This document shows positions 5,766-63,999 of a DNA stretch of 64,000 nucleotides, in pieces. The notes beneath the pieces were generated by a model. That model did no database searches. It was given only the letters and a program-made list of their open reading frames with translations, and had not been told where the DNA came from. Both the position numbers and the translations under genes were made by a program. Positions within the stretch are counted from its first letter, which is position 1. Every line of letters starts with the position of its first letter. The stretch lies in the IMG/VR virus record IMGVR_UViG_3300042892_005961, positions 1 through 64,000 of that record. One strand, given 5' to 3'.

Positions 5766-6347
5766 TCAAATCAATTTTTTACTTGACACGTTCCGTAATT
5801 TTTTAGCTGCGGGATCAATAATATTTAATATGTCGATATATCTTAAACTATTGATTTCCAAATAATTAACTAATTTTTGGATGTCCTTTTTTGTTTCAAA
5901 TATATCTTCATAGGTAACTTGCAAACCATTAATAACATTTAAAATTTCTATTTTTGATTTATTAAGATACTCCTCATTTAAACGAAATTCAGATTCATTT
6001 AAATTTAACCAATCTGTTGTTATGATATTATATTGTTCATATTTATCTTTCCTAATAAATGTCTGTAAACTAATTGCACATTCTTTAATATCATTTCTTG
6101 TTAAACATATTATCTTATCAAATGTATTAAGATATTCCTCATAGTCCAAACCAAATTCTTTAATTGATTCCGGTATTTCCTCAATTAAAACATTGTCACC
6201 ATTTAATGCACGTTCAGCGTTATGTCTATTAAATGGGTTGTCTTCACCTAAAGGTTCGTGATAATGATGAAGTTGTAATTCCGATGCTATCCATTGTGAT
6301 AAAACAAAACCACCCGCTCTTCTATGTTTAAGTATTAATATTCTCAT
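5766..6347 (-). CDS. sulfotransferase-like (P-loop) protein
   Basis: ILKHRRAGG 5'-PSB-like start, LTRN, VTYEDIF; ends KKLI. Confidence 0.6.
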   Translation of the reverse strand: MRILILKHRRAGGFVLSQWIASELQLHHYHEPLGEDNPFNRHNAERALNGDNVLIEEIPESIKEFGLDYEEYLNTFDKIICLTRNDIKECAISLQTFIRKDKYEQYNIITTDWLNLNESEFRLNEEYLNKSKIEILNVINGLQVTYEDIFETKKDIQKLVNYLEINSLRYIDILNIIDPAAKKLRNVSSKKLI

Positions 6348-7125
6348 ATTTTAAAATGTATTCGTAAAATAGTTCTGCCTGTACTTTATGTCCTTTCTCA
6401 CCTAAATGAGTGTCATCTTCAACTACATGGTTTGTTTCCATATATATGGTTTCACCACCTTTAAACATAATCATAGACATAAAGTCACCCCCATGATATT
6501 CCTTAACATACTGACGTGGTGTTATTACATTATGTAATATATATTTCTTTTGGTTGTATTTTTCAGGAGGTAATGAATATATTATATCATTGTCAGTAGA
6601 CCAAAAATAAATTTCAAATCCTCTCGCATCGGCATACTGTTCAATTATGTTCTCATAATTGTAAATCTCATCAATATATAAACTGGTTGATCTGTTAACA
6701 ACTATTTCCTCCTTGGTTGATTTAGAGATATAATTAAAATCGTCAGGATTACCATTATGTGAACTTAACTTTCTCCAAGTGTGTAATGGATTACCTTCTT
6801 TATCTTTATGTGCCCATGATCCGTCAGCGTGTTTTATTAAACATGACCATCTAAACCTATCCCTATATGCCCAATTTACAAACACGATGTCTCCTTTCTT
6901 AAAAGTGTGAGCATTTTCACAAACATCCTGAAATATTTGAACGTTTGAATTACCACCGACTCCGTGGTTGATTGTTTCCATTCCTAACTTTTCACCTAAT
7001 ATATCTACCCAACACGGTGGTAGATTTCCACCTCTTAATTCCCTCCATTGAATAAACGGTGGGTAGGTACATTCGTATGGTTGTCCTTCGGTATAACTAT
7101 CCCCAAATGCATGTATTGTATTCAT
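6328..7125 (-). CDS. SGNH/GDSL-like hydrolase/acyltransferase
   Basis: FGDSYT, GVGGNSN, DTHLGEKGH. Confidence 0.7.
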   Translation of the reverse strand: MNTIHAFGDSYTEGQPYECTYPPFIQWRELRGGNLPPCWVDILGEKLGMETINHGVGGNSNVQIFQDVCENAHTFKKGDIVFVNWAYRDRFRWSCLIKHADGSWAHKDKEGNPLHTWRKLSSHNGNPDDFNYISKSTKEEIVVNRSTSLYIDEIYNYENIIEQYADARGFEIYFWSTDNDIIYSLPPEKYNQKKYILHNVITPRQYVKEYHGGDFMSMIMFKGGETIYMETNHVVEDDTHLGEKGHKVQAELFYEYILKYENINT

Positions 7126-7126
7126 T

Positions 7127-7777
7127 TTAATCCGGTATTAAATCTATAAAGTTAATATAAGTGTATCTATTCCAATTTTCAACTTTAGATACCTCATGTC
7201 TTAAATTATTATTTGTAAAATCTAAAATTGTATATGTTGTATATTTTGGTTCAACAATAACTTTAATACCATGTGAATCTTCAATTGTTAAACTACCTCC
7301 GATAGCATCTTCAGGTATTTCTTTATTAAGATAAATTAAAACAACACATATTCTGTTTTTAGAATCTTTATCATTATCCACGTGTGAGTCTATAAAACAA
7401 CCATCGTTGAACATGGTATATTCATCGTTGTAAATTAATTTACTATCGTCCTTTAAATCATATAAGTCTTTAATTAATTCAAAAGATAATTTCCTAAGAT
7501 TATCACTTACCGGTATGTCAACACTAAACCATTTTTGGAATACTCCAAAAACATTTTCGTCAGTTTCTTTAACGTATTTATCATACGTTAAACTTTGTTC
7601 ATAAGTGCAACTTTTAGTAAAATGTAATTTAATTAAATCTTTTCCTGCGATGTCATATCTACAAGATAAATTGTTTGTATCTTTTGATTTTTCAATTACT
7701 AAATCAATATCATCTTTAATGATACTATCATAATCAAATGAACCAATTAGATATCCGTTATTAAATAATGTATTCAT
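7127..7777 (-). CDS. 2OG-Fe(II) oxygenase
   Basis: HVD...VLIYLN...GGSL...HEV...R. Confidence 0.8.
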   Translation of the reverse strand: MNTLFNNGYLIGSFDYDSIIKDDIDLVIEKSKDTNNLSCRYDIAGKDLIKLHFTKSCTYEQSLTYDKYVKETDENVFGVFQKWFSVDIPVSDNLRKLSFELIKDLYDLKDDSKLIYNDEYTMFNDGCFIDSHVDNDKDSKNRICVVLIYLNKEIPEDAIGGSLTIEDSHGIKVIVEPKYTTYTILDFTNNNLRHEVSKVENWNRYTYINFIDLIPD

Positions 7778-8544
7778 TAAATATTTTTTATAATATAGTT
7801 ATAAAACAAATCACATTGAACCTGATGACCCGTTACACCATAATGCCAATCTCTGACTTTTTCATTTGTTTCTTCCATTATTGTTTTAGCACCTTCTTCT
7901 TTAAATAAACTCATATAATCTCTTTCACCTAAAATATCTGATAATAAATACTTTTTATCATTTTTGATTTCTTTATTCTTATAATTTACAATATTATTAT
8001 CTACTGTCCAATAAAATATATTAAATCCTGTATTATCAGCAAATTGATTTAATAGTTTCTGTTGAATAAATAATTCATTGATCCATAATGGATTTGTTCT
8101 ATTAACAAATATATTCTCCGCTGTATTATTATCGATGTAATCTGGATAATCGGGTATACTAGTACCAGGGACCAACGCGGGATAAACAGATATCATTGAT
8201 TTACCTGTTTCGTTCGCCCATTTAAACCTTTCAATATACGTCCATTCAACAATAACAATGTCTCCTTTCTTAAACTGATTACAATAATAAGCGATGTTGT
8301 TTAATATCGATTGATTACAATTACCTTCCCCAAAATTATTAATCGTGTTTTTATAACCCCCATTACCTGAATAATTTTTAATATCAAATCCTAACTTTTT
8401 AGATAACATCGTTGGCCATGAATCTGGAGCAACACCATTAAAGTATTGTTCAATATAATCAACTCTTGTATTGGGTGATGTTCTTGGTAGTAGAACACTA
8501 AATTCCTCACTAAAACTACAACCAAATGTAAATAATGTGTTCAT
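7777..8544 (-). CDS. SGNH/GDSL-like protein
   Basis: FGCSFS, DWHYGVTGH; ends LFYNYIIKNI. Confidence 0.7.
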   Translation of the reverse strand: MNTLFTFGCSFSEEFSVLLPRTSPNTRVDYIEQYFNGVAPDSWPTMLSKKLGFDIKNYSGNGGYKNTINNFGEGNCNQSILNNIAYYCNQFKKGDIVIVEWTYIERFKWANETGKSMISVYPALVPGTSIPDYPDYIDNNTAENIFVNRTNPLWINELFIQQKLLNQFADNTGFNIFYWTVDNNIVNYKNKEIKNDKKYLLSDILGERDYMSLFKEEGAKTIMEETNEKVRDWHYGVTGHQVQCDLFYNYIIKNI

Positions 8545-8547
8545 TCA

Positions 8548-9321
8548 TTAAATATTTTTTATAATATAATTATAAAATAATTCAAATTGAACTCTATGTC
8601 CACTTTCTCCTAAATGTGTGTCGGTACAATTTCCATTTGTTTCTTCTTTAACTATTAACCCACCATATTTTCTAATGGTTTTAAAAAAAGTACCTCCCAC
8701 ATCATCAAAAAATAAAGGATCTCTTTCAATGATTAAATCATTAATTATATATTTTTTTTGGTGTAATTTTTCGGGTGGTAAAGTATAGATAATGTCACTA
8801 TCACCAGACCAATAAAAAACATTAAATCCAATCGATTTAGATAATTGGTCAATTATTTTTTCATAATTATAAATTTCTTCAACATATAAAATTGAAGATC
8901 TGTTTTCAATAATATCTATTTTTGTTTGTTTTTTTATATCTTCACTATTATCGGAAGCGATGGATATTCTTATCCAATCAGGAATATTATATAAACCTTC
9001 TAGCTCTCTATTTCTTAATACCGCCCATCTAAATCTGTTTAAAACAGCCCAATTAATTATTACAATATCTCCATTTTTAAATTGGTCACAATTTTTACAT
9101 ATTGTTTCAAATATTTCTTGATTTGAATTACCTCCATGTCCATAATTCACAACATCCATATTAAGTTTTTTACCTAATAAATCAATCCATATTGGAGGTA
9201 AATTACCTCCCCTATATTCTTTCCATTGTTGATATGGTTTGAATGTCTTATCTTGAAAATGTCCGGCGGTAAAACTATCACCAAATCCAAATAATGTTGC
9301 CATAAATTTATTATTTAACAA
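8548..9321 (-). CDS. SGNH/GDSL-like protein (start probably MATLF)
   Basis: FGDSFT, GHGGNSN, DTHLGESGH; same last 10 aa as the neighbouring paralogue. Confidence 0.7.
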   Translation of the reverse strand: MLNNKFMATLFGFGDSFTAGHFQDKTFKPYQQWKEYRGGNLPPIWIDLLGKKLNMDVVNYGHGGNSNQEIFETICKNCDQFKNGDIVIINWAVLNRFRWAVLRNRELEGLYNIPDWIRISIASDNSEDIKKQTKIDIIENRSSILYVEEIYNYEKIIDQLSKSIGFNVFYWSGDSDIIYTLPPEKLHQKKYIINDLIIERDPLFFDDVGGTFFKTIRKYGGLIVKEETNGNCTDTHLGESGHRVQFELFYNYIIKNI

Positions 9322-11474: not shown

Positions 11475-11477
11475 TAA

Positions 11478-26875: not shown

Positions 26876-27145
26876 TTAAAATAAAGTTTTGGTAGTCTTT
26901 GTGGGTGGAAAATATAGACTATCCACCGATTCCCATTTTTTTAATGGACAATCATTAAATGTTGCACTAAATATTTTTTTGGAAAGTGGACATCCACATT
27001 CATTGCATTTATAATACGATAAAATAGTTTTAACTTTGGATGGACATGTATTGCATATATCATGTCTTTTTTCAGCCAATTCTAATTGTTTATCAGTTGG
27101 GTTTGCGGATGCAATCCAAGCTTTTGCAATTTTTAAAAAATCCAT
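26876..27145 (-). CDS. small Cys-rich (DUF6171-like) metal-binding protein
   Basis: RxxICxxCP...CNECGCPL..K...CPLKKW; ends KTTKTLF. Confidence 0.7.
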   Translation of the reverse strand: MDFLKIAKAWIASANPTDKQLELAEKRHDICNTCPSKVKTILSYYKCNECGCPLSKKIFSATFNDCPLKKWESVDSLYFPPTKTTKTLF

Positions 27146-36276: not shown

Positions 36277-36314
36277 AAAACCCTGACAACTAACAACTAA
36301 CGTCAGGGTTTTTT
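36277..36314. terminator. bidirectional rho-independent terminator
   Basis: aaaaccctgac...gtcagggtttt between convergent genes. Confidence 0.75.
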
Positions 36315-53713: not shown

Positions 53714-55843
53714 CTAAATTGGTAGAAGTTTTTCGAGTTTTTCTATAACTTCTCCTCCTGTAATAGTTTTTGAACATTCAAATTGGTTTTCTGTCTTTTC
53801 ATGAATAGGACACCAATTCCAATTACCTGGATCAAATTCATGGTTAGACCAACAACTATTACATACATTTTTATTGATTACCCTTGTTACACCGTCTAAT
53901 GGTTCTAAATCTACGTCAGTAAAACCTGAAATAATTACTGTAGGGGTTCCTGACGCCCAAGATAACCAACTTAATCCACTGCTTATACCTATAAATAATT
54001 CAGACTCTTGTAAAACTTTTATGATATCGGTCAGTTTACCCTTAGGTTGTACCGTAATTCCTTTAGGATGTTTGTTACCCATGTAACCATCTTCCTCACG
54101 AGATAAGAGTCTGACTTCATAATTCTTAGCTTTAAGATAATCTACCACCTCCTGCCAACCGGTTGGATTATTCCAATATTTACATTGAGCTGTTGAATGA
54201 ATAGCAATTGAAACCAATTTTTTCTTCTTCTTACCTAATTTCTTTAATTTAGGTTTAAGTTCCACATAATCCAATCCGAGAATATCGGATGCCACTTTCA
54301 TTAATGGTTCCTTTTTAGGGTCGTTGTAATGTTTTGTATAATCAATTTTACGTTCATTAGTATAAAATAACCCCAAACGATATAACGCGTGTATATTATT
54401 TACGTTTGATCCAGGTAAAACAAACTCAATATCGGGATACTGATCTTTGAATAGATCATTATTGAATGATGAACAAATTACTTTACATTTATTATCTGTT
54501 CTAAATTTCTCAACATATGGTATCCAAGCTAAACTATCTCCTAATGATTTAGATTCAAAACATATCATTACTCTTTTATCCGTTAAATCAAAATTATACT
54601 CTTGGTAGAAATTATTATCAACACCTTTAATTTTAATTAACCAATCTACATAGTATTTTTTAGACGATCTAACCCAATGATTACTCTTTAAATTAAACTC
54701 AAATTCTAATTTACCATTTTTCTTATCTATAAATTGAACGTTGTAAAGATAATCACCTTCTTCTAATACCTCAACAAATGGACCATCAACAAAATGAATG
54801 TTTGTTCTTCTATTTGTGTTAACATTATTTCTTGATAGTTTATTCTTTCTTCTAAACTCATTCATTTCATCTTTAAGTTCCTGTGTGAATATTTCCAATC
54901 CTTGATGACGTACTTCAACTACTTCATTTTGTTTATATTCACCGAGTCTTTCTAATTTGTATTCACCCTTTTTAACTGTATGGAATTTTTTATATGTTCC
55001 ATAGTTAACTTCAATTAAATAATCCTTATCAGCTGGTTGTTCTGAAAATCCGGATATAAAATGAATAAACAATTGTCCCGCATCATCAACACCTAAATAA
55101 GTTTGTAAACGAGCACCATTTTTTAATATACCATTCCTATTCCATACCGCAAACATATTAAGTTCATTATCATTAGGGATATACTTACTAACAAATATAC
55201 TATTGGTAACCTTCTTAATTGATTGGTATAATTGTTTTTCTAATTGCCATCTATCGGGTTTACCCTTGAAGTATTCTTCTTTACTATTAATAAGACTAAT
55301 CATCTTTAACGCAACATCGGTCTTAATTGAAAAGATATAAGCTGAACTATATGGATTACTTTCTTTTGTTGATCCTTCTGAATACTCGTAAACTACGGCA
55401 TCATTACTTCTAATATATTCCATAAATGCTTGACGATACTGAATTTCATCTGGTAAGTTATCATACTCTAAGAAATGAATATATTGTTTACCTAATTGTT
55501 TAACAAGATTGAAAGCATTTTTCATTGTCAACCAAATTGCATAGTCGTGATGAAAATCTATTTTATTAGTTATCTTATACGTTCCCATATCAGTCCATCT
55601 ATCACTATTAATACCATACTCAGCAAAATCCTTTTCTAATAATATGTCGTTATTACCATCATATAGATAGTAATCCGCTAACACTTGTATCTCAGGTGAA
55701 ACTGCATAATGTCCACATAATATAATGGGACAATTATAAACCTTTAAACTTATAAGTAATTTCTTTAAAACATTTTCTTTATCTTTATTATCAGGCCAGC
55801 AGTCAACTACAAAAACATCATCATTAAATTGTGTATATCCCAT
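53714..55843 (-). CDS. TibC/Aah-like (autotransporter O-heptosyltransferase, GT9-related) glycosyltransferase with N-terminal extension
   Basis: SKSLGDSLAWIPY, HSTAQCKYWNNPTGW, FIGISSGLSWLSW, VIISGF, CNSCW...CP...FECSK Cys cluster. Confidence 0.8.
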   Translation of the reverse strand: MGYTQFNDDVFVVDCWPDNKDKENVLKKLLISLKVYNCPIILCGHYAVSPEIQVLADYYLYDGNNDILLEKDFAEYGINSDRWTDMGTYKITNKIDFHHDYAIWLTMKNAFNLVKQLGKQYIHFLEYDNLPDEIQYRQAFMEYIRSNDAVVYEYSEGSTKESNPYSSAYIFSIKTDVALKMISLINSKEEYFKGKPDRWQLEKQLYQSIKKVTNSIFVSKYIPNDNELNMFAVWNRNGILKNGARLQTYLGVDDAGQLFIHFISGFSEQPADKDYLIEVNYGTYKKFHTVKKGEYKLERLGEYKQNEVVEVRHQGLEIFTQELKDEMNEFRRKNKLSRNNVNTNRRTNIHFVDGPFVEVLEEGDYLYNVQFIDKKNGKLEFEFNLKSNHWVRSSKKYYVDWLIKIKGVDNNFYQEYNFDLTDKRVMICFESKSLGDSLAWIPYVEKFRTDNKCKVICSSFNNDLFKDQYPDIEFVLPGSNVNNIHALYRLGLFYTNERKIDYTKHYNDPKKEPLMKVASDILGLDYVELKPKLKKLGKKKKKLVSIAIHSTAQCKYWNNPTGWQEVVDYLKAKNYEVRLLSREEDGYMGNKHPKGITVQPKGKLTDIIKVLQESELFIGISSGLSWLSWASGTPTVIISGFTDVDLEPLDGVTRVINKNVCNSCWSNHEFDPGNWNWCPIHEKTENQFECSKTITGGEVIEKLEKLLPI

Positions 55844-56511
55844 TATCTTTTTCTTATTAAAATTATTCCATTAAGGAAGGTTATTGATTCTATATCAGTT
55901 CTACAATCAGGTTGTACTTTATTTGAATATGGTATTAGTTTATCTTCTCGTCGATCCCATACTGCGGCTTGATCATCTAAGTTCTCAACACCTCTAAAGT
56001 TAATATCATCCGTTAATTTCTTGAAGTATTCCATCATACTCTTAGGGTCATTTAAACCTCCACCGTACCAAGGGAAATAGGATGTTGCAACATCTTCAAC
56101 AATGTACATACCACCCGATTTAACGTATTGAAATAGTGTTTTAAATGAATAAATAACATGTTCATTCAAATGTGATCCGTCATCTAATATAAAATCAAAT
56201 GGACCATATTCATTTGAAATTTGATTTAAAAACTTATCATCATCTTGTGAACCTATTTCAACAAAAATTCTATCTTCCTCATATTTTTTACAATCAGGAT
56301 TGATGTCAATACCTAAAATATTAGAACGATAATAATAATCCTTCCAAGTTAATAGTGATTTACCATCTAAGACACCAATCTCCAATATGTTTAATTTATC
56401 ATATCTGTTAAATGGTAAATACTTTTCATATTTAACACAATAATTGTGATTGTCGGAAGACTTATCAGTTCCGTATACTTTAGCCAAATTATCTAATGTA
56501 CTCATTTCCAA
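55843..56511 (-). CDS. class I SAM methyltransferase (sugar O-methyltransferase-like)
   Basis: YGTDK, LEIGV, GIDI, GSQ, DFILDDGSH, GGMYIVED. Confidence 0.85.
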   Translation of the reverse strand: MEMSTLDNLAKVYGTDKSSDNHNYCVKYEKYLPFNRYDKLNILEIGVLDGKSLLTWKDYYYRSNILGIDINPDCKKYEEDRIFVEIGSQDDDKFLNQISNEYGPFDFILDDGSHLNEHVIYSFKTLFQYVKSGGMYIVEDVATSYFPWYGGGLNDPKSMMEYFKKLTDDINFRGVENLDDQAAVWDRREDKLIPYSNKVQPDCRTDIESITFLNGIILIRKR

Positions 56512-59237
56512 AAATATATCATTTGTAAACTGTTATTATTACCCATAAATAATAGATATGAATTGAATCCTAATCCATTCATTTTATTTATAAAATTTGT
56601 TCTTAATTCATCATCAAAATCAAAATGACTATGATGATATTCCATTGCTATGGTTTTAACTTTTTGTAAGTTCTCATCACTGATACCCGCAAATGCTGCA
56701 TGTTCTGCTCCTTCAATATCGACCTTAAGGAAATCAATATGATCCACCAAACCACTTTCAAAAAGATAGTTTAATGTATATGTTTTAACACTATATCCTT
56801 CCTGACCTTCAATACCAAAAACATTTGATCCTCCTAAGTGAGTACTCTCATATAAATTCAATTCTCCAATTTCATGTGCAGCAGCCGCATTAAATAATAT
56901 TGAACGTGGGTCAGCATTAAGTGACAGTAATTTAAAATATCGTCTATCTGGTTCAAATGAAATTACTTTACTCGCACCTTGATGATATGCCCACCTATTG
57001 AAGATACCCATATTACCTCCCAAATCAACCACAATATCTCCTTCATGTATTCTTCTTTCATTACCACCTTTATAGTAATCGTGTAAGTTAAAAATTTCAT
57101 GGTAGATAGCTCTTGCCCACCCATACTTATCTGCAACTTCAATGGTTCCACCTTGTACATCTTTAATATCACCTAAGTTCTCTAACTTATATGTGTTAAC
57201 ATCTAATGATGTGTAAAATTGTTCTGATTTATAAAAACTATTATCACGTTTCATCTTAATGAAGTCCATCATGAAATCAGACATCTGTGCATTCTTATTA
57301 CCGTGGAAATAAAGAATTTGATTCTTATCTTTTGGTATTGCTTGGTACCCAAATATTCTATTGAAATTCTGAGGTCCTTCCTCGTTCCAAAACTTTAAGA
57401 AATGATGTTGCGTTTCATTTGTCATTCCATCATCACCATCGTAAGATGATGTATCAAAATTTGATAGTGGTAAATGTTTTTTAAAGTTGTATTTCCATCT
57501 CATCACATTATCAATACCCTCATCGTTCCATAGGTATAAACGTTTGTAATCTTTACCTCCGTCTTCCATTACTTTTACATAATGACTAAGAATCTCTTCA
57601 AACCACCATTTACATTCTTTATTATAGATATACATACAAACGTGCATATAAGGTTGTTGTTTTTGAACTCCCCATTCTTTTGCAACTTGTTCGTTAAATA
57701 GTTGTGAATTTTTTCCATCATCATACCAACCAAAGAATTCTTCCTGAACATGTATATCGGATATCGGATAGTTTTCAATCTGTTTGAAATAAGATTTAAT
57801 ATTATCTACGTTGTAGTTTACGACAACATCACCATCCATCCAAACGTAATTATCAAATCCTTCATTAATAGATTCAATACATGCCATTTGTTTCCAATAC
57901 CATTTATCGTGTTCAGATATCTTTGGTGTTGTTATCGTTCTTTTGATAATATTTGGATAGTCAAATGGAACCTCACAATCAATACCGTATACTATAATCT
58001 TACGTTTAGAAAATTCTAATAATGATTGAACTAACTTTTCAATAACCGGCATGTATCCGATATTACCAGTTGTGATGAAAGCAAAGTCATCAAATTTATT
58101 TTCAAGTATATCTGAAGCACCCTTTGCAACAGTACTCCAATTAAACTCTTCATGTATTTCTTTTGATTCAACCACAGCAAATGATTTATGTCGTTTATAT
58201 TCGTTAAATGCACTTAACATTTGTTCTCCCAAATTATTCCAATCAGGTTCACAATATTCACCAGGGAAATCTTTATGTTCCACATTAGCAGGTTTTAATC
58301 CATCTATCTTTACAGGAATACCTTTACCTTCCGCAAACTGTAACTGACCTCCCCAATCTGAATAGATCGACGGTGTTCCACAAGCCATAGCTTCAATCAA
58401 CGGTAAGTTCCATCCTTCACTACGTGCACATGTAACAAACACATCACCCTCTTGCAAATATTTTACATATTCTTCCTGTGGTGTGAATTTTATAAACTTG
58501 ATATTCGTTGTATCTATGTTGTGATGTTTAACTCTTTCTTCGGTTGTTTTAAGTCCGTCAAATGGATATGGGTTTTCAACTGATGCAATTAACTCCACAT
58601 CATCTCTATCTTTAAATGTCTCACTAAACGCTCTTAAAACCTCTGTAGTTCCCTTTCTATAATCCCATCTACCAAAATGTAAGAACCTAAATTTGTCCTT
58701 CTTTGATGTCTTAGTTAACGGTTTAAATGTATCTACATCAACTCCCTCAGGAACTATTGATATTTTATGTGATGGATAACCCTGTTCAACCAAACAATCA
58801 AATTGCCATTGTGTTGGAACCCATACCTCGTCAAAGTAATGTAATCTTTTAAAGAAATTATCGGGATAACGTGTTGATTCCCAAACATTATAAGCTATTT
58901 TATAACCATCATAGTCATCATAAAAATAACGATTGTTAGTATCAACCAAAACAATATGAACGTCAGGTTTATAACCACCATCATATCCATAGATTGGGTA
59001 ATCCGATCTACTACCATCCGAATTATTAAGAGTTTGAAGAATTAACATATCCTTCATCTCATCTGTAATATAAGGTTCATTATCGTGTGGGGTATCATTC
59101 ATACCCTTCCAACCACCTCCGATTGTTGAATTCCTAACTTTAACTGTGTGGTATTTGTTCAGAGCACAAAAAAAGGACTTTGCGTGATTAGCATATCCTG
59201 TTACTCCGATAAAACATGTATGTGCAAGTATTTTCAT
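56502..59237 (-). CDS. fusion: GT4 glycosyltransferase + GT-A-like domain + FkbM methyltransferase
   Basis: TGYANH, RKG, SEGWNLPLIEAMACG; central WMDGD; C-terminal VVDLGGNMG, SFEP, LKVDIEGAE. Confidence 0.85.
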   Translation of the reverse strand: MKILAHTCFIGVTGYANHAKSFFCALNKYHTVKVRNSTIGGGWKGMNDTPHDNEPYITDEMKDMLILQTLNNSDGSRSDYPIYGYDGGYKPDVHIVLVDTNNRYFYDDYDGYKIAYNVWESTRYPDNFFKRLHYFDEVWVPTQWQFDCLVEQGYPSHKISIVPEGVDVDTFKPLTKTSKKDKFRFLHFGRWDYRKGTTEVLRAFSETFKDRDDVELIASVENPYPFDGLKTTEERVKHHNIDTTNIKFIKFTPQEEYVKYLQEGDVFVTCARSEGWNLPLIEAMACGTPSIYSDWGGQLQFAEGKGIPVKIDGLKPANVEHKDFPGEYCEPDWNNLGEQMLSAFNEYKRHKSFAVVESKEIHEEFNWSTVAKGASDILENKFDDFAFITTGNIGYMPVIEKLVQSLLEFSKRKIIVYGIDCEVPFDYPNIIKRTITTPKISEHDKWYWKQMACIESINEGFDNYVWMDGDVVVNYNVDNIKSYFKQIENYPISDIHVQEEFFGWYDDGKNSQLFNEQVAKEWGVQKQQPYMHVCMYIYNKECKWWFEEILSHYVKVMEDGGKDYKRLYLWNDEGIDNVMRWKYNFKKHLPLSNFDTSSYDGDDGMTNETQHHFLKFWNEEGPQNFNRIFGYQAIPKDKNQILYFHGNKNAQMSDFMMDFIKMKRDNSFYKSEQFYTSLDVNTYKLENLGDIKDVQGGTIEVADKYGWARAIYHEIFNLHDYYKGGNERRIHEGDIVVDLGGNMGIFNRWAYHQGASKVISFEPDRRYFKLLSLNADPRSILFNAAAAHEIGELNLYESTHLGGSNVFGIEGQEGYSVKTYTLNYLFESGLVDHIDFLKVDIEGAEHAAFAGISDENLQKVKTIAMEYHHSHFDFDDELRTNFINKMNGLGFNSYLLFMGNNNSLQMIYFWK

Positions 59238-59268: not shown

Positions 59269-60039
59269 TCAAATCAAATTTTGTATATTTTTTGATACGA
59301 AATCGTATAGTTTATGTGAGTAGGTTTTATTATGTATAGGACCTGGATGATAATTATCCACACCTAAATCTAAATATTCTCCGTAATCCCCATCAAACCT
59401 ATTAGGTTCATCATATTCAAGTGATTTTAATTCTCCACCATTCCAAATCCAATTACATTTTTTTGATTCTAAAAAATATTTTATTAATAAATGATTTTTA
59501 TACCAATTTATTGTGTCCTCATTATTATTTTGTAAATAAGTTAAATATTCTTGTGTTTTAATACCGTCATCCGTCTCCTTTAAATAACCCCAAGAAGTTG
59601 TTGGAATAAATGGTTCAATTCCACCATCTTCGGTATAAATTTCTCTTCTATGTGGGAATGTATACATTATTAAAACCAAATCTGGTTTAATCAAATCATA
59701 ATAACTCATTAAACATCTACATATAAAATCATTACTTCTTCCACCTGTTCCGAAATTAAAATTTACCGCATTTTCCATATGACTACAAAATTGTGCAGGC
59801 CAAGTTTCATTATCATTTACACCAACTCCTTCCGTAATTGAACAACCCAAAGACATTACTTTAAATCCTTCTTTTTTTATACTATCCCCCCTAAATCCTA
59901 ATTCATTATAGGTGTATGTACATAAACCTGTATTATCTGATCCCGATGTTGTATATGTTCTGCCGACCCTTTCTTTTAGAGAATATTTATAAGATGATAT
60001 TTCAAATCCTTCTGGATTCCAATATTTTATTACTTTCAT
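59269..60039 (-). CDS. SGNH/GDSL-like protein
   Basis: YNELGFRG, LGCSITEG, GRSND, YHPG; ends QNLI. Confidence 0.7.
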   Translation of the reverse strand: MKVIKYWNPEGFEISSYKYSLKERVGRTYTTSGSDNTGLCTYTYNELGFRGDSIKKEGFKVMSLGCSITEGVGVNDNETWPAQFCSHMENAVNFNFGTGGRSNDFICRCLMSYYDLIKPDLVLIMYTFPHRREIYTEDGGIEPFIPTTSWGYLKETDDGIKTQEYLTYLQNNNEDTINWYKNHLLIKYFLESKKCNWIWNGGELKSLEYDEPNRFDGDYGEYLDLGVDNYHPGPIHNKTYSHKLYDFVSKNIQNLI

Positions 60040-60536
60040 ATTAATTTATTTATATCAAATTTTACATGTTCACTTTGTAAAAACCAAAGTAATGAGTATC
60101 TTTCCCCACTTAAAATAGGTGTAATTTCATGTTCAATTCTCACATCAAATAAATAAGTATTTCCCATTTCTTTATTTAACATATATTCATTTGGATTATA
60201 TAATTTAAAATCTCCTCCCTCAAAGTCATCATTTAATAAAACTCCCACCGCATATACTCTATTATTTCTAATATCATTATGTTTTCCAAACCAATCACCA
60301 TTTGTAAATTTATGAAAATGTATTGTTTTTTTTATTGTTCCAATTTTAATGTTTGTTTCTTTTTCCACAAAAACCTTCAACTTATCAAATAACCAAATAG
60401 TATTTTTATTATATTCTATGCTCGTTGATTCATATATTCTATCTTTATAGTTCCAATTTTGTTTTTTTGATTTTGTTATATCAATAATAGATTGACACTC
60501 TTGTTGATTAAATAATATTTTTTGTATTAAAATCAT
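60036..60536 (-). CDS. 2OG-Fe(II) oxygenase (prolyl-4-hydroxylase-like)
   Basis: HND, LNDDFEGG, HEITPI.SGERYSL; ends NKLI. Confidence 0.85.
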   Translation of the reverse strand: MILIQKILFNQQECQSIIDITKSKKQNWNYKDRIYESTSIEYNKNTIWLFDKLKVFVEKETNIKIGTIKKTIHFHKFTNGDWFGKHNDIRNNRVYAVGVLLNDDFEGGDFKLYNPNEYMLNKEMGNTYLFDVRIEHEITPILSGERYSLLWFLQSEHVKFDINKLI

Positions 60537-61162
60537 AATAACATTTTATTTTTCTTTTTAAATTTATTTATAAATAAATCGGATAATTGTAGATGACCAT
60601 TTTCACTAAAATGCCAATCATTTAATTCACCATTTGTTTCTATAAATATGGTTTCAAATTTATTTAAAAACATACAATCCAATCGTTGGTCAAATGGTGT
60701 CCAATGAATTATTTTTTTATCTAAATTGTTTAATAATTTAATCCAACTATTTACTTCATTACAATATCTTATATCATCTCTGTTTAAAAGAATCTCAATA
60801 AGAGTAGATTCGGATATTTTTGTTTTGTCAATTTCTTTAGTTGAAAATTTATCGTAATTTGGTAAAATTGTTATCCAATCATTAGAAACTAACCTAAATC
60901 TCAACGGAGATGACCATCCAATTATTACTAAATCGTTTTTTTTAATATTTTTTACGTTATCACAAAATTTTTGTAATATAGAATAATTGTCAGATGCATT
61001 ATCAGCTAGATTAATTAATTCTAAATTTAATTTTTGTGAAATGATTTCACTAAACCCTTTTGGTGTATAACCTTTCCAATTTACATAATTATTTGTCCAA
61101 TTAGATTCAAATGAAAATCCAGCAGAAAAACTATCTCCAAATATATAAAGTTTTTGTTTCAT
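60533..61162 (-). CDS. SGNH/GDSL-like protein
   Basis: FGDSFS, ASDN, DWHFSENGH; ends KMLL. Confidence 0.7.
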   Translation of the reverse strand: MKQKLYIFGDSFSAGFSFESNWTNNYVNWKGYTPKGFSEIISQKLNLELINLADNASDNYSILQKFCDNVKNIKKNDLVIIGWSSPLRFRLVSNDWITILPNYDKFSTKEIDKTKISESTLIEILLNRDDIRYCNEVNSWIKLLNNLDKKIIHWTPFDQRLDCMFLNKFETIFIETNGELNDWHFSENGHLQLSDLFINKFKKKNKMLL

Positions 61163-61176: not shown

Positions 61177-61764
61177 TTATATTAGATGCATTTTTTCTAA
61201 TATATCTCTTTTCAATATAGTTAAAACAATTGACCACCTTTCACCATCAACTATTTCTTTTATTTCATGTAAGGTTGTGGCATCATATGCAATCGCATTG
61301 CCCACTTCTTTACTTAACAAAATTTCTTTATTGTTTTCATCGTAACAAATATATTCACCACCAATATAATTGTCATTTAATTGTATTCCCAAATTCCATC
61401 TTCTATTTGGAAAGTTACTATTAAAATCCATATGTTTCATAAATGAATCACCTTTTGAATACTTGTGTAGTGAACAACCAACTGGCTTATTATCGGGATT
61501 ACGTTCAACTTTTGAAACCATTAAAAACCAACTAAAAAGTTTTTCAAACATCCATTCCGATTCTGTATCATTTACTATATCCCAAACATTAAAAAATTTT
61601 CCCAATTTTTTACCATTCTCCATTTTTGTAAATTCGTTAATTCTTCTATTATCCAAATCTAATCTATATTCTGATTTTCTAAATGGTAAATCGGTATAAA
61701 TTTTTGTATATGATAATATTTTATCACATTCTTCTTTTGTAAATATTTTTTCTTGATAAATCAT
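61177..61764 (-). CDS. 2OG-Fe(II) oxygenase
   Basis: HMD, LNDNYIGG, HEIKEIVDGERWS; ends KMHLI. Confidence 0.85.
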   Translation of the reverse strand: MIYQEKIFTKEECDKILSYTKIYTDLPFRKSEYRLDLDNRRINEFTKMENGKKLGKFFNVWDIVNDTESEWMFEKLFSWFLMVSKVERNPDNKPVGCSLHKYSKGDSFMKHMDFNSNFPNRRWNLGIQLNDNYIGGEYICYDENNKEILLSKEVGNAIAYDATTLHEIKEIVDGERWSIVLTILKRDILEKMHLI

Positions 61765-61774
61765 ATTAATTTAA

Positions 61775-62251
61775 TTATATAATATTTTTTATTTTTTTAC
61801 TAACCCATACTACCATCATCTCTCTACGGCCTGATTTTATCTCTTTAACTTCATGATATTCTTTCTGTCCATCGAATACTACCACATCTCCTTTTTTAAA
61901 GGGAATTAAATTGTCATTAACATATAACTCCCCTCCTTCGAAACTATCATTTAACATAATCAAATACGTTTTATTTGCTTTAATATCTAGATGTTTTTTG
62001 GCATAATAACCGGATTCATATTTAATATAGTGTAATGAATATATTATTTCATCTTCTTCTAATGTTACATATTTTAATAATGTATCAACTAATATCTTAT
62101 TAGTTAAATCACAATAAAATATTTCTTTTAAATGAATTACATTTTTAAAATCGTGATATGATTTTATTTTTTTATTTTCATTTCCAAAATTATAATTTTT
62201 TAACATTATATCAATGTCATCATAATTAATTTTATTTTTAAATATATTCAT
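61775..62251 (-). CDS. 2OG-Fe(II) oxygenase
   Basis: HLD, LNDSFEGG, HEVKEIKSGRR; ends KNII. Confidence 0.85.
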   Translation of the reverse strand: MNIFKNKINYDDIDIMLKNYNFGNENKKIKSYHDFKNVIHLKEIFYCDLTNKILVDTLLKYVTLEEDEIIYSLHYIKYESGYYAKKHLDIKANKTYLIMLNDSFEGGELYVNDNLIPFKKGDVVVFDGQKEYHEVKEIKSGRREMMVVWVSKKIKNII

Positions 62252-62257
62252 TATGTA

Positions 62258-62815
62258 CTAAATAAGTGTTTTTGTTTTATTAATTCTATATTTGTTACCA
62301 ATTGGAAATCCTATATTTTTAACTTCTTCTATATTAAGATAATTAACAATTTTTTTAAATCCATTATTATAATATAATTCTTCGTAAGAAATTGTAAAAA
62401 AATCTTTATTAACATATTTTTCTTTAAATTCAGATTTTAATATCTTAAAATATTCTGTTTTTTCTTTGGTAATTGAATTTTCTGATGTTTTATAAACATA
62501 TGGTAGATGCCAGTTATCCGTATTTACCGCATTTAAAAATGATTCCAATTGTTCTTGTGTATTTTCTCTATATAGTACAATAATTTTATCGGATACATTT
62601 AACAATGAATTCCAATTTAAAGTAGGATAATATATTTCTTTAATACAAAGATGTTTAGTTTTATATTTATAATCTTTTGGGTCAATATTATTTTGAAACC
62701 ATTTACTATTAGGATTTTCCGGTTCAAATAGTGTGGTAAAGTTTTTATTAAAATAAAACCAATTCGTAAGATTTGTTGAACCACTTCTCGGTTCTGCTAA
62801 AATTGTGATAATCAT
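62258..62815 (-). CDS. sulfotransferase-like (Stf0-like) protein
   Basis: LAEPRSGST, FEP, LYREN, ISYEELY; ends KTKTLI. Confidence 0.7.
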   Translation of the reverse strand: MIITILAEPRSGSTNLTNWFYFNKNFTTLFEPENPNSKWFQNNIDPKDYKYKTKHLCIKEIYYPTLNWNSLLNVSDKIIVLYRENTQEQLESFLNAVNTDNWHLPYVYKTSENSITKEKTEYFKILKSEFKEKYVNKDFFTISYEELYYNNGFKKIVNYLNIEEVKNIGFPIGNKYRINKTKTLI

Positions 62816-62833
62816 ATTAATAATATTTTTATA

Positions 62834-63421
62834 TTAAAGTATTGTTTTTTTTTCCTTTAAAATCGGAAAATCAAATAATACATTTGCGGCAATTACAATT
62901 CTATCGATAGTAGAATTAATTGAAGTATCAGGTCTATGATATACATCTGCAGGGAAAATAACAAGTTCATTTTCTTCTGGTAAAAACATCCTTTGTACAT
63001 TATCTTCTTTATCCATAAAAAATAATTTACCATCGTTCCCAGTTAAATTATTTGGCATTTGTACATAATAAGTGAATGTGCAATTGCTTTCTATTGATTT
63101 TTTTACATGTGGAGCAAACATTGTGTGGTTATGATAATGAGATTGTGTATCCTCATCCCTAGAAATAAAAATCCAAGAATATAAACAATAATCAACTTCT
63201 TCAACTTTTTTATCTTTTTTAAATAATTCTATACATCTCTTAACACCATAATTTAAAATAAAATCAATTTCTTTACATGTTAATACTATGTTAGTTTGAA
63301 TACCTGGTGTCAGATGTGATGGTTCATAATTAAATAATGATACGTTTTGATATATTTTTTTTATCAAAATTTCTTTTTCATATGGATATTTTATTTTTTC
63401 TCTATATATTTTATCAATCAT
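62834..63421 (-). CDS. 2OG-Fe(II) oxygenase-like (cupin) protein
   Basis: HNH, TYYVQMP, GKLFF, VIFPADVYH, RIVIAAN; ends KKTIL. Confidence 0.75.
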   Translation of the reverse strand: MIDKIYREKIKYPYEKEILIKKIYQNVSLFNYEPSHLTPGIQTNIVLTCKEIDFILNYGVKRCIELFKKDKKVEEVDYCLYSWIFISRDEDTQSHYHNHTMFAPHVKKSIESNCTFTYYVQMPNNLTGNDGKLFFMDKEDNVQRMFLPEENELVIFPADVYHRPDTSINSTIDRIVIAANVLFDFPILKEKKTIL

Positions 63422-63999
63422 AGTAAACTAATTATATTTTTTGTTTTAAGATTTGTTTCATAAATCCACCCACTTATAGAATATCTTTTATAATTTTTAT
63501 CAATAATTTCATCTACACAATGTAAATCTTTTATATTTTCAACATCAAAAATATTTAAACTATTAAATTTGGGTAATAATTTGTATGTAATATTATTTTT
63601 ATCATCTATGAAGTTTAAGCAACCACCTTTTTTTTCATCTGCATCTTTTGTTAAATTGTAAACAAAAGCATATTTTCTACCCAAAGATACATCGTTATGT
63701 GGAGATAAAAAATGGCCATATGTATATTTTGAGACAAATACACTCTGTGCTGTAAAAAACTTATCTTCTAACAATTTACTAATTTCTAATTCCAAATTTA
63801 ATAGAAAAAATAAGTTTTGTATAAATTCTTTGTTTTCAATACTACTATACCAATATGAAAATTCACCTTCTTTAAATTTTGATTTTTCATATTCATAAGA
63901 TTTTTTATGTTTTGAATTTGTAATCCAATCAGTTTGAGAATCGATTATATCATATACATTATTTGCAATACCATCAGATAAAAAATTTTCTATTTGTAT
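63418..63999 (-). CDS. 2OG-Fe(II) oxygenase (5' end outside the window)
   Basis: Frame is open from 63999 (IQIENFLSDG...); HND, GGCL, HCV, RYSISGW; ends KNIISLL. Confidence 0.8.
   Translation of the reverse strand: MQIENFLSDGIANNVYDIIDSQTDWITNSKHKKSYEYEKSKFKEGEFSYWYSSIENKEFIQNLFFLLNLELEISKLLEDKFFTAQSVFVSKYTYGHFLSPHNDVSLGRKYAFVYNLTKDADEKKGGCLNFIDDKNNITYKLLPKFNSLNIFDVENIKDLHCVDEIIDKNYKRYSISGWIYETNLKTKNIISLL

What the first reader, a model, noticed from the sequence alone, without database searches (positions are those of the whole stretch)
5766..63999. Shared C-terminal tail (basic, then two hydrophobics) on ~15 unrelated tailoring-type proteins
Seen: proteins of four different folds end alike. 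Sulfotransferase-like: KKLI (5766), KTIKTLF (26138), KTKTLI (62258). Cys protein: KTTKTLF (26876). SGNH-like: KKII (36313), KNII (39324), QNLI (59269), KMLL (60533), and looser IIKNI (7777, 8548). 2OG oxygenases: NKLI (60036), KMHLI (61177), KNII (61775), KKTIL (62834), KNIISLL (63418). Most other genes here (glycosyltransferases, IscU/A, helicase, PcfJ) lack it. Two genes co-transcribed with the Hint gene both end KTLF. Inference: this is a terminal docking or sorting signal (PDZ/TPR-like recognition of a free carboxylate) that recruits enzymes to one scaffold or compartment. Alternatively it is the carboxylate substrate of the ATP-grasp ligase at 27267-28793.
Basis: partly seen in the sequence, partly recalled or inferred. 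Interest (0 to 1): 0.85.

Follow-up and report, generated by a model that had tools for sequence, protein, structure and literature searches.

The report
Shared C-terminal tag on phage enzymes
A group of large uncultured phages puts the same four-to-five-residue ending (Lys-x-polar-Leu/Ile-Ile/Leu-COOH) on about twenty unrelated families of small modifying enzymes, all encoded next to one unusual ligase-intein-like protein, which points to a plug-in "address tag" not described in the papers I could search.

Summary
Thirteen of the 15 listed proteins end in K/N/Q-x-[L/I]-[L/I/F]; the two IIKNI ends do not fit. It occurs in 0 of 179 ORFs of an equally AT-rich control phage that carries 13 2OG oxygenases.

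In 140 related viral loci, sequence families are either about 75-100% tagged (19 families) or 20% or less tagged (18 families). Tagged families include 2OG oxygenases, SGNH hydrolases, radical SAM enzymes, Trp halogenases, two sulfotransferase-like families, DUF6734 and a small zinc-ribbon protein. The last two residues stay fixed at 25-35% identity, with free codon choice, whether or not a gene follows. In a confident structure model they lie on a low-confidence, probably disordered extension.

Tagged genes sit directly downstream of a conserved protein made of an ATP-grasp-like domain, a Hint domain and a hypervariable 8-Cys peptide.

Best reading: the tail is a docking tag that recruits interchangeable tailoring enzymes to a shared partner, most likely that protein. 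The partner is inferred, not shown. I found no published description in the literature I could search.

The parts
59269..60039 (-). Tagged enzyme, SGNH-like on weak evidence (DUF6071 below cut-off); tail ...IQNLI. Last gene of the array, followed by a 31-nt spacer that holds a promoter-like motif.
   Evidence: 17 of 22 family members tagged
60036..60536 (-). Tagged 2OG-Fe(II) oxygenase; tail ...INKLI
60533..61162 (-). Tagged SGNH/GDSL-like hydrolase (below Pfam cut-off); tail ...NKMLL
61177..61764 (-). Tagged 2OG-Fe(II) oxygenase; tail ...KMHLI
61775..62251 (-). Tagged 2OG-Fe(II) oxygenase; tail ...IKNII
62258..62815 (-). Tagged sulfotransferase-like protein (PAPS loop PRSGST); tail ...TKTLI. 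In the model the last 4 residues have pLDDT below 50.
62834..63421 (-). Tagged 2OG-Fe(II) oxygenase; tail ...KKTIL
63418..63999 (-). Tagged 2OG-Fe(II) oxygenase, cut at its 5' end by the window edge (204 aa in the contig); tail ...IISLL. The array continues beyond the window to a second ATP-grasp-Hint gene at contig 65138-66634.
27267..28793 (-). Untagged array leader (family F3). It has an N-terminal domain resembling the circularly permuted ATP-grasp fold of eukaryotic glutathione synthetase. This is followed by a Hint/intein-like domain without the first Cys but with an invariant His-Asn, and then a hypervariable Cys-rich peptide of about 44 residues.
26876..27145 (-). Tagged small zinc-ribbon protein (family F12; CxxC...CxxCGC...C); tail ...TKTLF after a linker of variable length. 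It is the most constant neighbour of the leader.
26138..26860 (-). Tagged sulfotransferase-2-like protein (family F8; loop PRCAS); tail ...IKTLF. Followed by about 260 nt with no gene.
5766..6347 (-). Tagged sulfotransferase-like protein (same family as 62258), away from the arrays; tail ...SKKLI
36313..36945 (-). Tagged SGNH/GDSL hydrolase; tail ...YKKII, followed by a terminator-like hairpin
39324..39998 (-). Tagged protein of unknown family; tail ...LKNII
7777..9321 (-). Two SGNH-like paralogues ending IIKNI. They do not fit the motif (Asn at -2) and I do not count them.
56502..59237 (-). Untagged conserved flank: glycosyltransferase-methyltransferase fusion (ends YFWK). It lies immediately downstream of the array in 64 loci.
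53714..55843 (-). Large GT9/TibC-like glycosyltransferase next to the tail-fibre gene. About half of its relatives end in x-K-L/F-L/I; the window copy ends KLLPI.
52307..53653 (-). Tail-fibre protein with collagen-like stretches. It gives the genomic context: the cluster adjoins the tail-fibre module.

Best explanation
The tail is a genuine, selected C-terminal short linear motif. Its consensus is K(-4), T/S/K/N(-3), L/I(-2), I/L(-1), then the free carboxylate, preceded by a Lys-rich linker that the one structure model places at low confidence.

It marks the members of a hypervariable array of small tailoring enzymes. The array belongs to a conserved phage gene cluster with this order: PAPS synthesis genes (APS kinase and a sulfate-adenylyltransferase-like protein), DUF2061, an ATP-grasp-like/Hint/Cys-rich-peptide protein (F3), a zinc-ribbon protein, a sulfotransferase, then 8-14 tagged enzymes. 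In many phages a glycosyltransferase-methyltransferase fusion and the tail-fibre module follow.

Proposed mechanism (inferred). The two terminal hydrophobic side chains, the free carboxylate and the upstream lysines dock into one shared receptor site. The receptor is most likely on F3, the only constant untagged protein at the head of every array. F3 also carries at its own C-terminus a hypervariable 8-Cys peptide downstream of a Hint His-Asn cleavage motif. That peptide is a plausible common substrate.

On this model any enzyme that acquires the tail can be plugged into the pathway. That would explain why unrelated folds carry it and why array content differs between close relatives.

Shown: the motif, its selection at the amino-acid level, its family distribution and its genomic link to F3. 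Inferred: that it is bound non-covalently, that F3 is the receptor, and that the Cys-rich peptide is the substrate.
For: Enrichment in the window, 12 of 91 against 0.9 expected.

Conservation in homologues down to 25% identity, and in 118 of 120 homologue clusters of the 62258 protein.

Bimodal family distribution: 19 families at least 70% tagged, 18 families at most 20% tagged, 4 intermediate. Tagged families include 2OG oxygenase, SGNH, radical SAM, Trp halogenase, DUF6734, sulfotransferase-like and zinc-ribbon proteins.

Selection is on amino acids, not DNA. Tail codon usage mirrors usage in the rest of the genes, and Ser at -3 uses both TCN and AGT codons. No shared DNA motif surrounds the stop codons.

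The tail does not depend on a downstream gene: 96% tagged when the next gene is close and 88% when it is far in tagged families, against 14% and 15% in untagged families.

The tail lies on a low-confidence, probably flexible extension: the 62258 model has mean pLDDT 91.8, and below 50 for the last 4 residues.

The tail was acquired on joining the arrays. Nine of the 13 closest short-form halogenase representatives match the tail pattern (a tenth ends STLL), against 3 of 137 canonical forms.

The same enzyme families in HTVC008M and P-SSM2 lack the tail. No relative of F3 was found in 50,697 GenBank phage records.

Position relative to F3: tail frequency is 0.79, 0.88, 0.71 and 0.74 at gene offsets +1 to +4 in 56 distinct loci, and falls to about 0.05-0.2 from +12 onward and at most positions upstream of -5.

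In a distant F3 relative (28% identity) the only member of this gene set kept beside it is the zinc-ribbon protein, which still ends KKNKTMI and overlaps the F3 start.

Against: No direct evidence identifies the receptor. No complex could be modelled with the tools at hand.

The tail logo is nearly the same across the three F3 subfamilies, so there is no co-variation signal pointing to F3 specifically.

Tagged genes also occur far from any F3 gene within the genome (5766, 36313, 39324). The link is therefore at genome level, not strictly at operon level.

Some array members lack the tail, for example a 2OG subfamily ending FWFH.

The ATP-grasp assignment of F3 rests on Foldseek E about 5e-5 with low TM-score, an invariant E-x-N motif and sub-threshold Pfam and ESM Atlas leads.

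A host factor could equally well read the tail.
Confidence: 0.45

Rival explanations
1. The tail is a covalent substrate. The ATP-grasp domain of F3 would activate the terminal carboxylate of tagged proteins and ligate it to an amine or thiol. The result would be a C-terminal extension, or conjugation to the Cys-rich peptide or to another target. This compares with RimK, tubulin-tyrosine ligase, LysX/LysW, or C-terminal conjugation of bacterial cGAS-like enzymes.
For: The strict end position and the invariance of the last two residues fit recognition of a free carboxylate. The F3 N-terminal domain resembles glutathione synthetase, which acts on a peptide's C-terminal carboxylate. ESM Atlas look-alikes include TTL, RimK and YheCD-type ATP-grasp families; these are leads only. 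The pairing of a small zinc-ribbon protein that has a flexible tail with an adjacent ATP-grasp gene recalls LysW/LysX from general knowledge, and it is the pairing kept in the most distant relative. Putative Mg/ATP residues are invariant in F3: E22, N24, K168, R107, R224.
Against: It is hard to see why 10-15 different enzymes per phage should all be ligated at their ends. A fused ATP-grasp would more naturally act on its own attached Cys-rich peptide. No acceptor is identified. The known ligases of this type use acidic tails, not Lys-rich hydrophobic ones (from general knowledge).
Confidence: 0.2
2. The tail is read by a host factor, not by a phage protein. It could be a degradation tag or a chaperone/unfoldase recognition tag, like the ClpX 'C-motif 2' of MuA (basic residues followed by a hydrophobic end). 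That would give timed turnover or remodelling of the enzymes.
For: The pattern of basic residues followed by two hydrophobic residues at a free, flexible C-terminus resembles the MuA RRKKAI signal (from memory, a lead only). No phage-encoded PDZ, TPR or Clp domain was found in the window proteins scanned.
Against: It does not explain why tagged genes cluster behind F3. It does not explain why the same enzyme families in two other marine AT-rich phages lack the tail, although their hosts differ. Maintaining a degron on about 20 accessory families under strong purifying selection has no obvious benefit.
Confidence: 0.12
3. The tail is a sorting signal to a place rather than to a protein scaffold. 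It could direct packaging into the virion (by analogy with encapsulin cargo-loading peptides, which bind an HK97-fold shell). It could instead give weak attachment to the membrane through a polybasic stretch plus a hydrophobic end.
For: In many loci the cluster adjoins tail-fibre and baseplate genes on the same strand. The tail is Lys-rich and ends in hydrophobic residues. C-terminal cargo peptides are the known way to load enzymes into phage-capsid-like shells (general knowledge).
Against: The enzymes need cytoplasmic cofactors (2-oxoglutarate and Fe, SAM, reduced flavin, PAPS), and 10-15 of them per virion seems unlikely. A membrane-targeting helix would tolerate extra residues after it, whereas this motif is strictly terminal. 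F3 arrays also occur away from structural genes.
Confidence: 0.1
4. There is no signal. On this view the endings are a by-product of AT-rich composition, of shared descent among paralogues, or of nucleotide constraints from the start region of the next gene.
For: The genome is 30% GC, and K, I, L and N are the four commonest residues. Many array genes overlap the next start as ATGA, and the last codon is biased to A-ending codons: ATA is 66% against 38% in the gene body.
Against: Internal positions of the same proteins give 0.9 expected against 12 observed. An equally AT-rich control genome gives 0 of 179. Untagged families in the same tightly packed operons stay untagged, and terminal genes of operons keep the tail. 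At least six unrelated folds carry it. Ser at -3 uses both codon families.
Confidence: 0.02

Closest known systems
Encapsulin cargo-loading peptides
   Same: A short C-terminal extension shared by unrelated enzymes directs them to one partner. The tag is portable between folds.
   Different: The published consensus as I recall it (a Gly/Ser/Leu-rich motif) is unlike K-x-x-L-I. No encapsulin shell gene was seen. Here the constant partner gene is an ATP-grasp-like/Hint protein, and the clients are arrays of tailoring enzymes in a phage.
RiPP leader peptide recognised by RRE domains of tailoring enzymes
   Same: Many different tailoring enzymes are directed to one ribosomal precursor by a single shared recognition element. 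The candidate core peptide has a conserved Cys framework with hypervariable loops.
   Different: The polarity would be reversed: the short peptide is on the enzymes, and the folded domain is on the precursor. No RRE domain was detected in the enzymes. That the product is a modified peptide is not shown.
Borosin-type precursors (core peptide fused to its own modifying enzyme)
   Same: An enzyme domain and a candidate core peptide lie in one polypeptide, with the core at the C-terminus.
   Different: Here the fused enzyme is an ATP-grasp-like domain and not an N-methyltransferase. A Hint domain with a His-Asn cleavage motif separates enzyme and peptide. Many further enzymes act in trans.
LysW/LysX amino-group carrier system; RimK-S6; tubulin-tyrosine ligase
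   Same: An ATP-grasp ligase works with a protein's flexible C-terminal tail. LysW is a small zinc-ribbon protein encoded beside its ligase, as the zinc-ribbon family F12 is here.
   Different: Those tails are acidic and are found on one client protein. Here the tail is basic-hydrophobic and is carried by about 20 families. Ligation is not shown.
ClpX recognition 'C-motif 2' (MuA C-terminus) and class I PDZ ligands
   Same: A free C-terminus with hydrophobic last residues preceded by basic residues. Ser/Thr at the third residue from the end (PDZ position P-2) in about half of the tails matches the class I PDZ rule.
   Different: Lys or Asn replaces Ser/Thr in about a third of tails. No PDZ or Clp gene was found nearby. 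The distribution follows a phage gene cluster, not a host.
CheR/CheB tethering by the NWETF pentapeptide of chemoreceptors
   Same: A terminal pentapeptide on a flexible linker raises the local concentration of modifying enzymes near their substrate.
   Different: There the substrate carries the tag and the enzymes bind it. Here the enzymes carry the tag.

Membership tests
Class I PDZ-binding C-terminus | Ser/Thr at P-2 (third residue from the end) and a hydrophobic last residue with a free carboxylate | tested here: inconclusive
   The last residue is I/L in 89% of tails. In the family-weighted logo P-2 is T 26%, S 22%, K 24%, N 11%. So only about half of the tails obey the rule.
Class I PDZ-binding C-terminus | A PDZ-domain reader is present | tested here: not met
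   No PDZ hit in about 48 window proteins and about 26 family representatives scanned with Pfam, PHROGs or NCBIfam. About half of the window's ORFs, the rest of the 211-kb genome and the host were not scanned.
Encapsulin cargo-loading peptide | An adjacent encapsulin (HK97-fold) shell gene and the family's consensus tag | tested here: not met
   No shell-like gene in the arrays. The tail consensus differs from the recalled encapsulin consensus; that comparison is from memory.
ClpX C-motif 2 degron | ClpX-dependent recognition of a basic-then-hydrophobic C-terminus | not testable with these tools
   Only the resemblance in pattern can be stated.
Hint/intein superfamily (F3, residues about 280-465) | Hint fold | tested here: met
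   The F3 family profile hits the MJ0781 (KlbA) intein at E = 3.4e-5. Foldseek best match is a BIL2 domain, target-normalised TM 0.78, followed by many inteins and Hedgehog.
Hint/intein superfamily (F3) | Terminal His-Asn for Asn cyclisation | tested here: met
   H463 and N464 are invariant in 32 sequences. They are present in 118 of 120 further homologues.
Hint/intein superfamily (F3) | Nucleophile (Cys/Ser/Thr) at position 1 of the Hint domain | tested here: not met
   By my reading of the aligned block (PKLLDTD, YHTDDDS, HGLLENE), position 1 is K, H or G. Full splicing or N-terminal thioester formation by this domain is therefore unlikely. Seven relatives carry a second, complete Hint domain beginning with Cys.
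ATP-grasp superfamily (F3, residues 1 to about 275) | ATP-grasp fold with the Mg-binding E-x-N motif and conserved Lys/Arg | tested here: inconclusive
   Foldseek E = 4.5e-5 to eukaryotic glutathione synthetases, but query-normalised TM is about 0.24. E22-x-N24, K168, R107 and R224 are invariant. Pfam ATPgrasp_ST matches only at E = 0.06 in 2 of 32 members. ESM Atlas look-alikes are ATP-grasp families.
PAPS-dependent sulfotransferases (62258, 5766, 26138) | 5'-phosphosulfate binding loop and sulfotransferase fold | tested here: met
   The loop is PRSGST in 62258 (R10 and G12 invariant, S13 nearly so) and PRCAS in 26138. In 5766 it is degenerate (HRRAGG); 5766 is placed here by family membership only. 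The 62258 model has pLDDT 91.8. Its best structural matches are Stf0, SULT7A1 and tyrosylprotein sulfotransferases, at modest TM of 0.5-0.57. PAPS-synthesis genes lie in the cluster. No Pfam hit.
RiPP-like biosynthetic cluster | A ribosomal precursor with a hypervariable core, encoded next to tailoring enzymes | tested here: inconclusive
   The peptide after His-Asn has a median length of 37 aa, and 8 Cys in 95 of 118 cases. It has a conserved Cys/SCPK framework with variable loops. Radical SAM, halogenase, 2OG oxygenase and sulfotransferase-like genes are adjacent. Cleavage, modification and the product are untested.

The most novel reading that the evidence does not exclude
These phages run a peptide-tailoring pathway with reversed recognition logic. 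The precursor is a large protein (ATP-grasp-like domain, Hint domain, then an 8-Cys hypervariable peptide released by Asn cyclisation). This protein carries the receptor. Every tailoring enzyme carries a 4-5-residue C-terminal address tag. Enzymes of any fold could then be swapped in and out, giving combinatorial chemistry on a disulfide-rich peptide. The chemistry would include hydroxylation, halogenation, sulfation, radical SAM reactions and glycosylation, a repertoire reminiscent of cone-snail toxins. The peptide may end up on the tail fibre or be released.
Probability: 0.3. Interest if true: 0.95.

Novelty: categorically new. Interest (0 to 1): 0.82.

Why it matters
If the tail is a portable docking tag, it is a simple rule of four or five residues by which a virus assembles interchangeable enzyme toolkits. 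It would be a ready-made handle for finding all members of the pathway in metagenomes, including ones of unknown fold. It would also be a handle for identifying the receptor by pull-down, and for engineering enzyme recruitment.

The tag also points to a widespread uncharacterised phage system. There are 341 loci in IMG/VR and 692 protein clusters in the public protein collection. The system is built around an ATP-grasp-like/Hint protein that ends in a hypervariable 8-Cys peptide, with its own PAPS supply. Phage-encoded, heavily modified, disulfide-rich peptides have not to my knowledge been described. They would bear on host recognition, on warfare between microbes and on natural-product discovery.

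Tried and rejected
Nucleotide-level motif or recombination site at gene ends: rejected. Sequences around the stop codons share nothing beyond AT-richness, stop codons and spacers vary, and codons in the tail vary.

Translational coupling with the next gene: rejected. The tail is kept on terminal genes, and tightly coupled untagged families lack it.

Composition artefact: rejected by the internal-position null and by the HTVC008M control genome.

Common descent of paralogues: rejected as the sole cause. Unrelated folds carry the tail, and canonical halogenases lack it.

Tail 'dialects' co-varying with F3 subfamilies: looked for, none found.

The conserved 126-aa gene upstream of F3 as a possible small receptor: rejected. 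It is a cytidylyltransferase-like, sulfate-adenylyltransferase-like protein.

Searches that found nothing:
- No DNA match of the window to GenBank phages.
- No protein match for F3, the zinc-ribbon protein or the helicase in GenBank phages.
- No natural fusion of a tagged protein to F3.
- Five literature searches found no description of the tail or of an ATP-grasp-Hint-Cys-peptide protein.

Read mapping was not used. It would not bear on the function of the tail.

Full report
**What the window is.** The window is positions 1-64000 of a 211-kb uncultured viral contig, IMGVR_UViG_3300042892_005961. It is about 30% GC. It encodes a tail fibre, a helicase, an endolysin-like protein and many sugar-modifying enzymes. 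It has no DNA match in GenBank phages. Related contigs reach 335 kb.

**Checking the observation.**
- Thirteen share the form K/N/Q, x, L/I, L/I/F at the end. The two IIKNI ends (7777, 8548) do not fit.
One of the 12 is probably a spurious antisense ORF.
- The simpler criterion, last two residues both L/I/F, gives 15 against 3.8 expected.

Because the pattern was chosen after looking at the data, I relied on independent data for the rest.

**Orthologues and families.** A search with the glycosyltransferase-methyltransferase gene 56502-59237 brought in 64 loci (one of them this contig itself) at 51-100% identity. Homologues of every gene of the 59269-63999 array keep the tail at 25-35% identity. 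They often keep it even where the alignment ends 10-15 residues before the C-terminus.

I clustered 897 dereplicated ORFs from the window and 63 related loci:
- 19 families are at least 70% tagged.
- 18 families are at most 20% tagged.
- 4 families are intermediate.

The family-weighted logo is K 60% at -4; T, K, S or N at -3; L/I 91% at -2; I/L 89% at -1. Positions -5 to -9 are Lys-rich.

Tagged families:
- three 2OG oxygenase families
- two SGNH-like families
- a radical SAM family
- a Trp-halogenase family
- two DUF6734 families
- two sulfotransferase-like families
- a small zinc-ribbon protein
- several families of unknown function

Untagged families:
- the glycosyltransferase-methyltransferase fusion
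- a methyltransferase
- a GT2 glycosyltransferase
- epimerases
- APS kinase
- a cytidylyltransferase-like protein
- DUF2061
- a carbamoyltransferase
- F3 (described below)
- genes linked to the tail fibre

Among 120 homologue clusters of the 62258 protein (58-97% identity), 118 end in a hydrophobic pair. The last residue is Ile in 113, while positions -5 to -8 vary freely.

**Ruling out trivial causes.**
- *DNA-level motif:* the DNA around the stops shares no motif.
- *Codon constraint:* tail codon usage mirrors usage in the gene body. Ser at -3 uses both TCN and AGT codons. The only bias is toward A-ending last codons, as expected where ATGA overlaps occur.
- *Translational coupling:* tagging does not depend on whether another gene follows closely. 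It is 96% (close) against 88% (far) in tagged families, and 14% against 15% in untagged families.
- *Base composition:* Pelagibacter phage HTVC008M is equally AT-rich (33.4% GC) and carries 13 2OG oxygenases, a Trp halogenase, carbamoyltransferases and glycosyltransferases. None of its 179 ORFs matches the pattern, and none of the 13 oxygenases has the tail. Prochlorococcus phage P-SSM2 likewise lacks it on its halogenase and neighbouring genes.
- *Common descent:* among the 150 best 50%-identity cluster representatives of the halogenase, 9 of the 13 short forms closest to the phage enzyme match the tail pattern (a tenth ends STLL). Only 3 of 137 canonical ~500-aa forms do. The tail was therefore gained when this lineage joined the arrays.

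**The tail lies outside the fold.** A model of the 62258 protein has mean pLDDT 91.8. Its best structural matches are sulfotransferases. Confidence falls to 78 for residues 171-180 and below 50 for the last four residues. In the 2OG oxygenases the Pfam domain ends 2-16 residues before the C-terminus.

**Genomic anatomy.** The tagged genes form contiguous same-strand arrays within a conserved cluster. The gene order is:
1. carbamoyltransferase (not always present)
2. APS kinase
3. sulfate-adenylyltransferase-like protein
4. DUF2061
5. F3
6. zinc-ribbon protein (F12)
7. sulfotransferase-like protein (F8)
8. 8-14 tagged enzymes, whose identity differs even between close relatives
9. in many phages, the glycosyltransferase-methyltransferase fusion, a methyltransferase, a large GT9/TibC-like glycosyltransferase and the tail fibre

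A profile search with F3 found 341 loci in IMG/VR. In 56 loci with distinct F3 sequences, the tagged fraction is 0.79, 0.88, 0.71 and 0.74 at gene offsets +1 to +4. It decays to about 0.05-0.2 from +12 onward and at most positions upstream of -5.

This genome has two F3 genes:
- The second (46% identical) is just beyond the window at contig 65138-66634. It heads the array whose downstream part is 59269-63999.

One hit came from the genome collection, on a contig binned as Flavobacteriaceae. There F3 is 28% identical. The only member of this gene set kept beside it is the zinc-ribbon protein, which overlaps the F3 start and still ends KKNKTMI. F3 has no relative among 50,697 GenBank phage records.

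**What F3 is.** The model is good (mean pLDDT 80, pTM 0.75). F3 has three parts.
- *Residues about 280-465: a Hint domain.* The family profile hits an archaeal intein at E = 3.4e-5. Foldseek matches intein-like (BIL) domains, inteins and Hedgehog. His463-Asn464 is invariant. The first-position nucleophile is missing.
- *The N-terminal half: resembles eukaryotic glutathione synthetase.* This is a circularly permuted ATP-grasp fold. The match has Foldseek E about 5e-5 and low TM-score. The E-x-N motif near the N-terminus and several Lys/Arg residues are invariant. Pfam and ESM Atlas give only sub-threshold ATP-grasp leads.
- *After His-Asn: a low-confidence peptide.* Its median length is 37 residues. 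It is 20% Cys and 13% Pro. It has 8 Cys in 95 of 118 homologues, with a conserved framework around an SCPK motif and hypervariable loops rich in Trp, Tyr, Pro, Asn, Ser and Thr. Seven relatives have a second, complete Hint domain in its place.

**Interpretation.**

*Shown:* a selected, strictly terminal motif on a low-confidence, probably flexible extension. It has been gained by unrelated enzyme folds. It is confined to phages that carry F3 and is concentrated directly behind F3.

*Inferred:* the tail is a docking tag read through its free carboxylate and two hydrophobic side chains. F3 is the likeliest reader, being the only constant untagged protein at the head of each array. The Cys-rich peptide that F3 carries behind a self-cleavage motif is a plausible shared substrate.

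The enzyme set fits a peptide or glycopeptide target:
- prolyl-hydroxylase-type 2OG oxygenases
- Trp halogenases
- sulfotransferase-like proteins with a dedicated PAPS supply
- radical SAM enzymes
- glycosyl-, methyl- and carbamoyl-transferases
- a cyclophilin and Fe-S assembly proteins elsewhere in the window (IscA-type ending seen)

**The main rival and lesser ones.** The main rival is that the ATP-grasp domain ligates the tagged C-termini. The conserved pairing of an ATP-grasp gene with a small zinc-ribbon protein that has a flexible tail recalls LysX/LysW. Sequence alone cannot separate the two models. Lesser rivals are reading by a host factor (ClpX-type degron, chaperone) and sorting to the virion or the membrane. 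The composition-artefact explanation is refuted.

**Limits.**
- The receptor is not identified, and no complex could be modelled.
- I found no co-variation between tail and F3.
- A few tagged genes lie far from F3 within the genome. Some array members are untagged.
- ORFs were called mechanically.
- Only 69 kb of the 211-kb genome was inspected.

**Novelty.** Five literature searches and the Pfam, PHROGs and NCBIfam libraries hold no description of the tail, of F3 or of the zinc-ribbon family. Terminal docking tags are known in principle: encapsulin cargo peptides, PDZ ligands, the chemoreceptor pentapeptide. A tag shared by about 20 enzyme families of a viral tailoring array, tied to an ATP-grasp-like/Hint/Cys-peptide protein, matches none of them on the features that could be tested.

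Noticed in passing
window 27267-27400 (C-terminal ~44 codons of the 27267-28793 gene); the same region in L003-L064 and in P0271-P0390: Behind an invariant Hint His-Asn, the ATP-grasp-like/Hint protein ends in a hypervariable Cys-rich peptide. Median length is 37 aa, with 8 Cys in 95 of 118 homologues. The framework is CP..C...C...C.SCPK...C....C.P.C with variable loops. It looks like a self-released precursor of a disulfide-rich peptide.
   Followed up: partly
L016, L023, L028, L039, L041, L047, L053 (F3 homologues of 615-635 aa): In seven relatives the Cys-rich peptide is replaced by a second, complete Hint domain. It begins with Cys (CF.AGT...) and ends VHNK. The conserved Cys of the peptide versions aligns with its first Cys.
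   Followed up: partly
contig 65138-66634, just beyond the window end (L002:2604-4112, L129): A second ATP-grasp-like/Hint paralogue (46% identical) has its own zinc-ribbon and sulfotransferase-like genes. The genome therefore carries two leader triads.
   Followed up: partly
L002:1545-2600 and most related loci (not inside the window): An APS kinase, a cytidylyltransferase-like (sulfate-adenylyltransferase-like) protein and a DUF2061 membrane protein lie directly upstream of the array leader. This is a phage-encoded PAPS supply for the sulfotransferases.
   Followed up: partly
window 5740-5757, 30697-30714, 59244-59261 (- strand); looser copies near 16896-16918, 40036-40055, 51975-51992: A promoter-like intergenic motif, TTTATTTTNNTTATATTA, has three exact copies, each lying 5-134 nt upstream of a minus-strand start codon (6 nt before the GT-MT start, 5 nt before the 30494-30691 gene, 134 nt before the 5237-5605 gene). 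With up to 3 mismatches there are 47 matches against 26 expected.
   Followed up: partly
window 36270-36312 (- strand, just after the 36313-36945 gene): A terminator-like hairpin with a GC-rich stem (CCCTGAC...GTCAGGG), flanked by A and T runs, follows the tagged SGNH gene.
   Followed up: no
window 53714-55843 and relatives (family F4): The large GT9/TibC-like glycosyltransferase sits next to the tail-fibre gene, and the tail fibre has collagen-like stretches. TibC-type enzymes glycosylate proteins, so the fibre may be glycosylated. About half of the relatives end in x-K-L/F-L/I, an intermediate state of tagging.
   Followed up: partly
window 6328-7125, 7127-7777, 7777-9321: A mini-operon of SGNH and 2OG paralogues has untagged or deviant ends (NINT, LIPD, IIKNI twice). 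It lies just upstream of the tagged sulfotransferase-like gene 5766-6347. These may be decayed tags or members of another system.
   Followed up: no
window 9880-10311; 30728-31460; 4409-5236; 3207-4437: The window also encodes a cyclophilin-type prolyl isomerase, IscA/IscU-like Fe-S assembly proteins, a beta-keto acid cleavage enzyme, a DegT-type aminotransferase fragment and a hexapeptide acyltransferase. All are untagged.
   Followed up: no
It lies antisense to minus-strand ORFs (15822-16642), so it is probably spurious. It slightly inflates the window count.
   Followed up: no
window 56502-59237 and 55843-56511, and their relatives: The untagged flanking enzymes have their own conserved ends: Y-F-x-K/R for the GT-MT fusion and I-T/R-K-R for the methyltransferase. 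This appears to be ordinary family-specific conservation, which contrasts with the cross-family tag.
   Followed up: no
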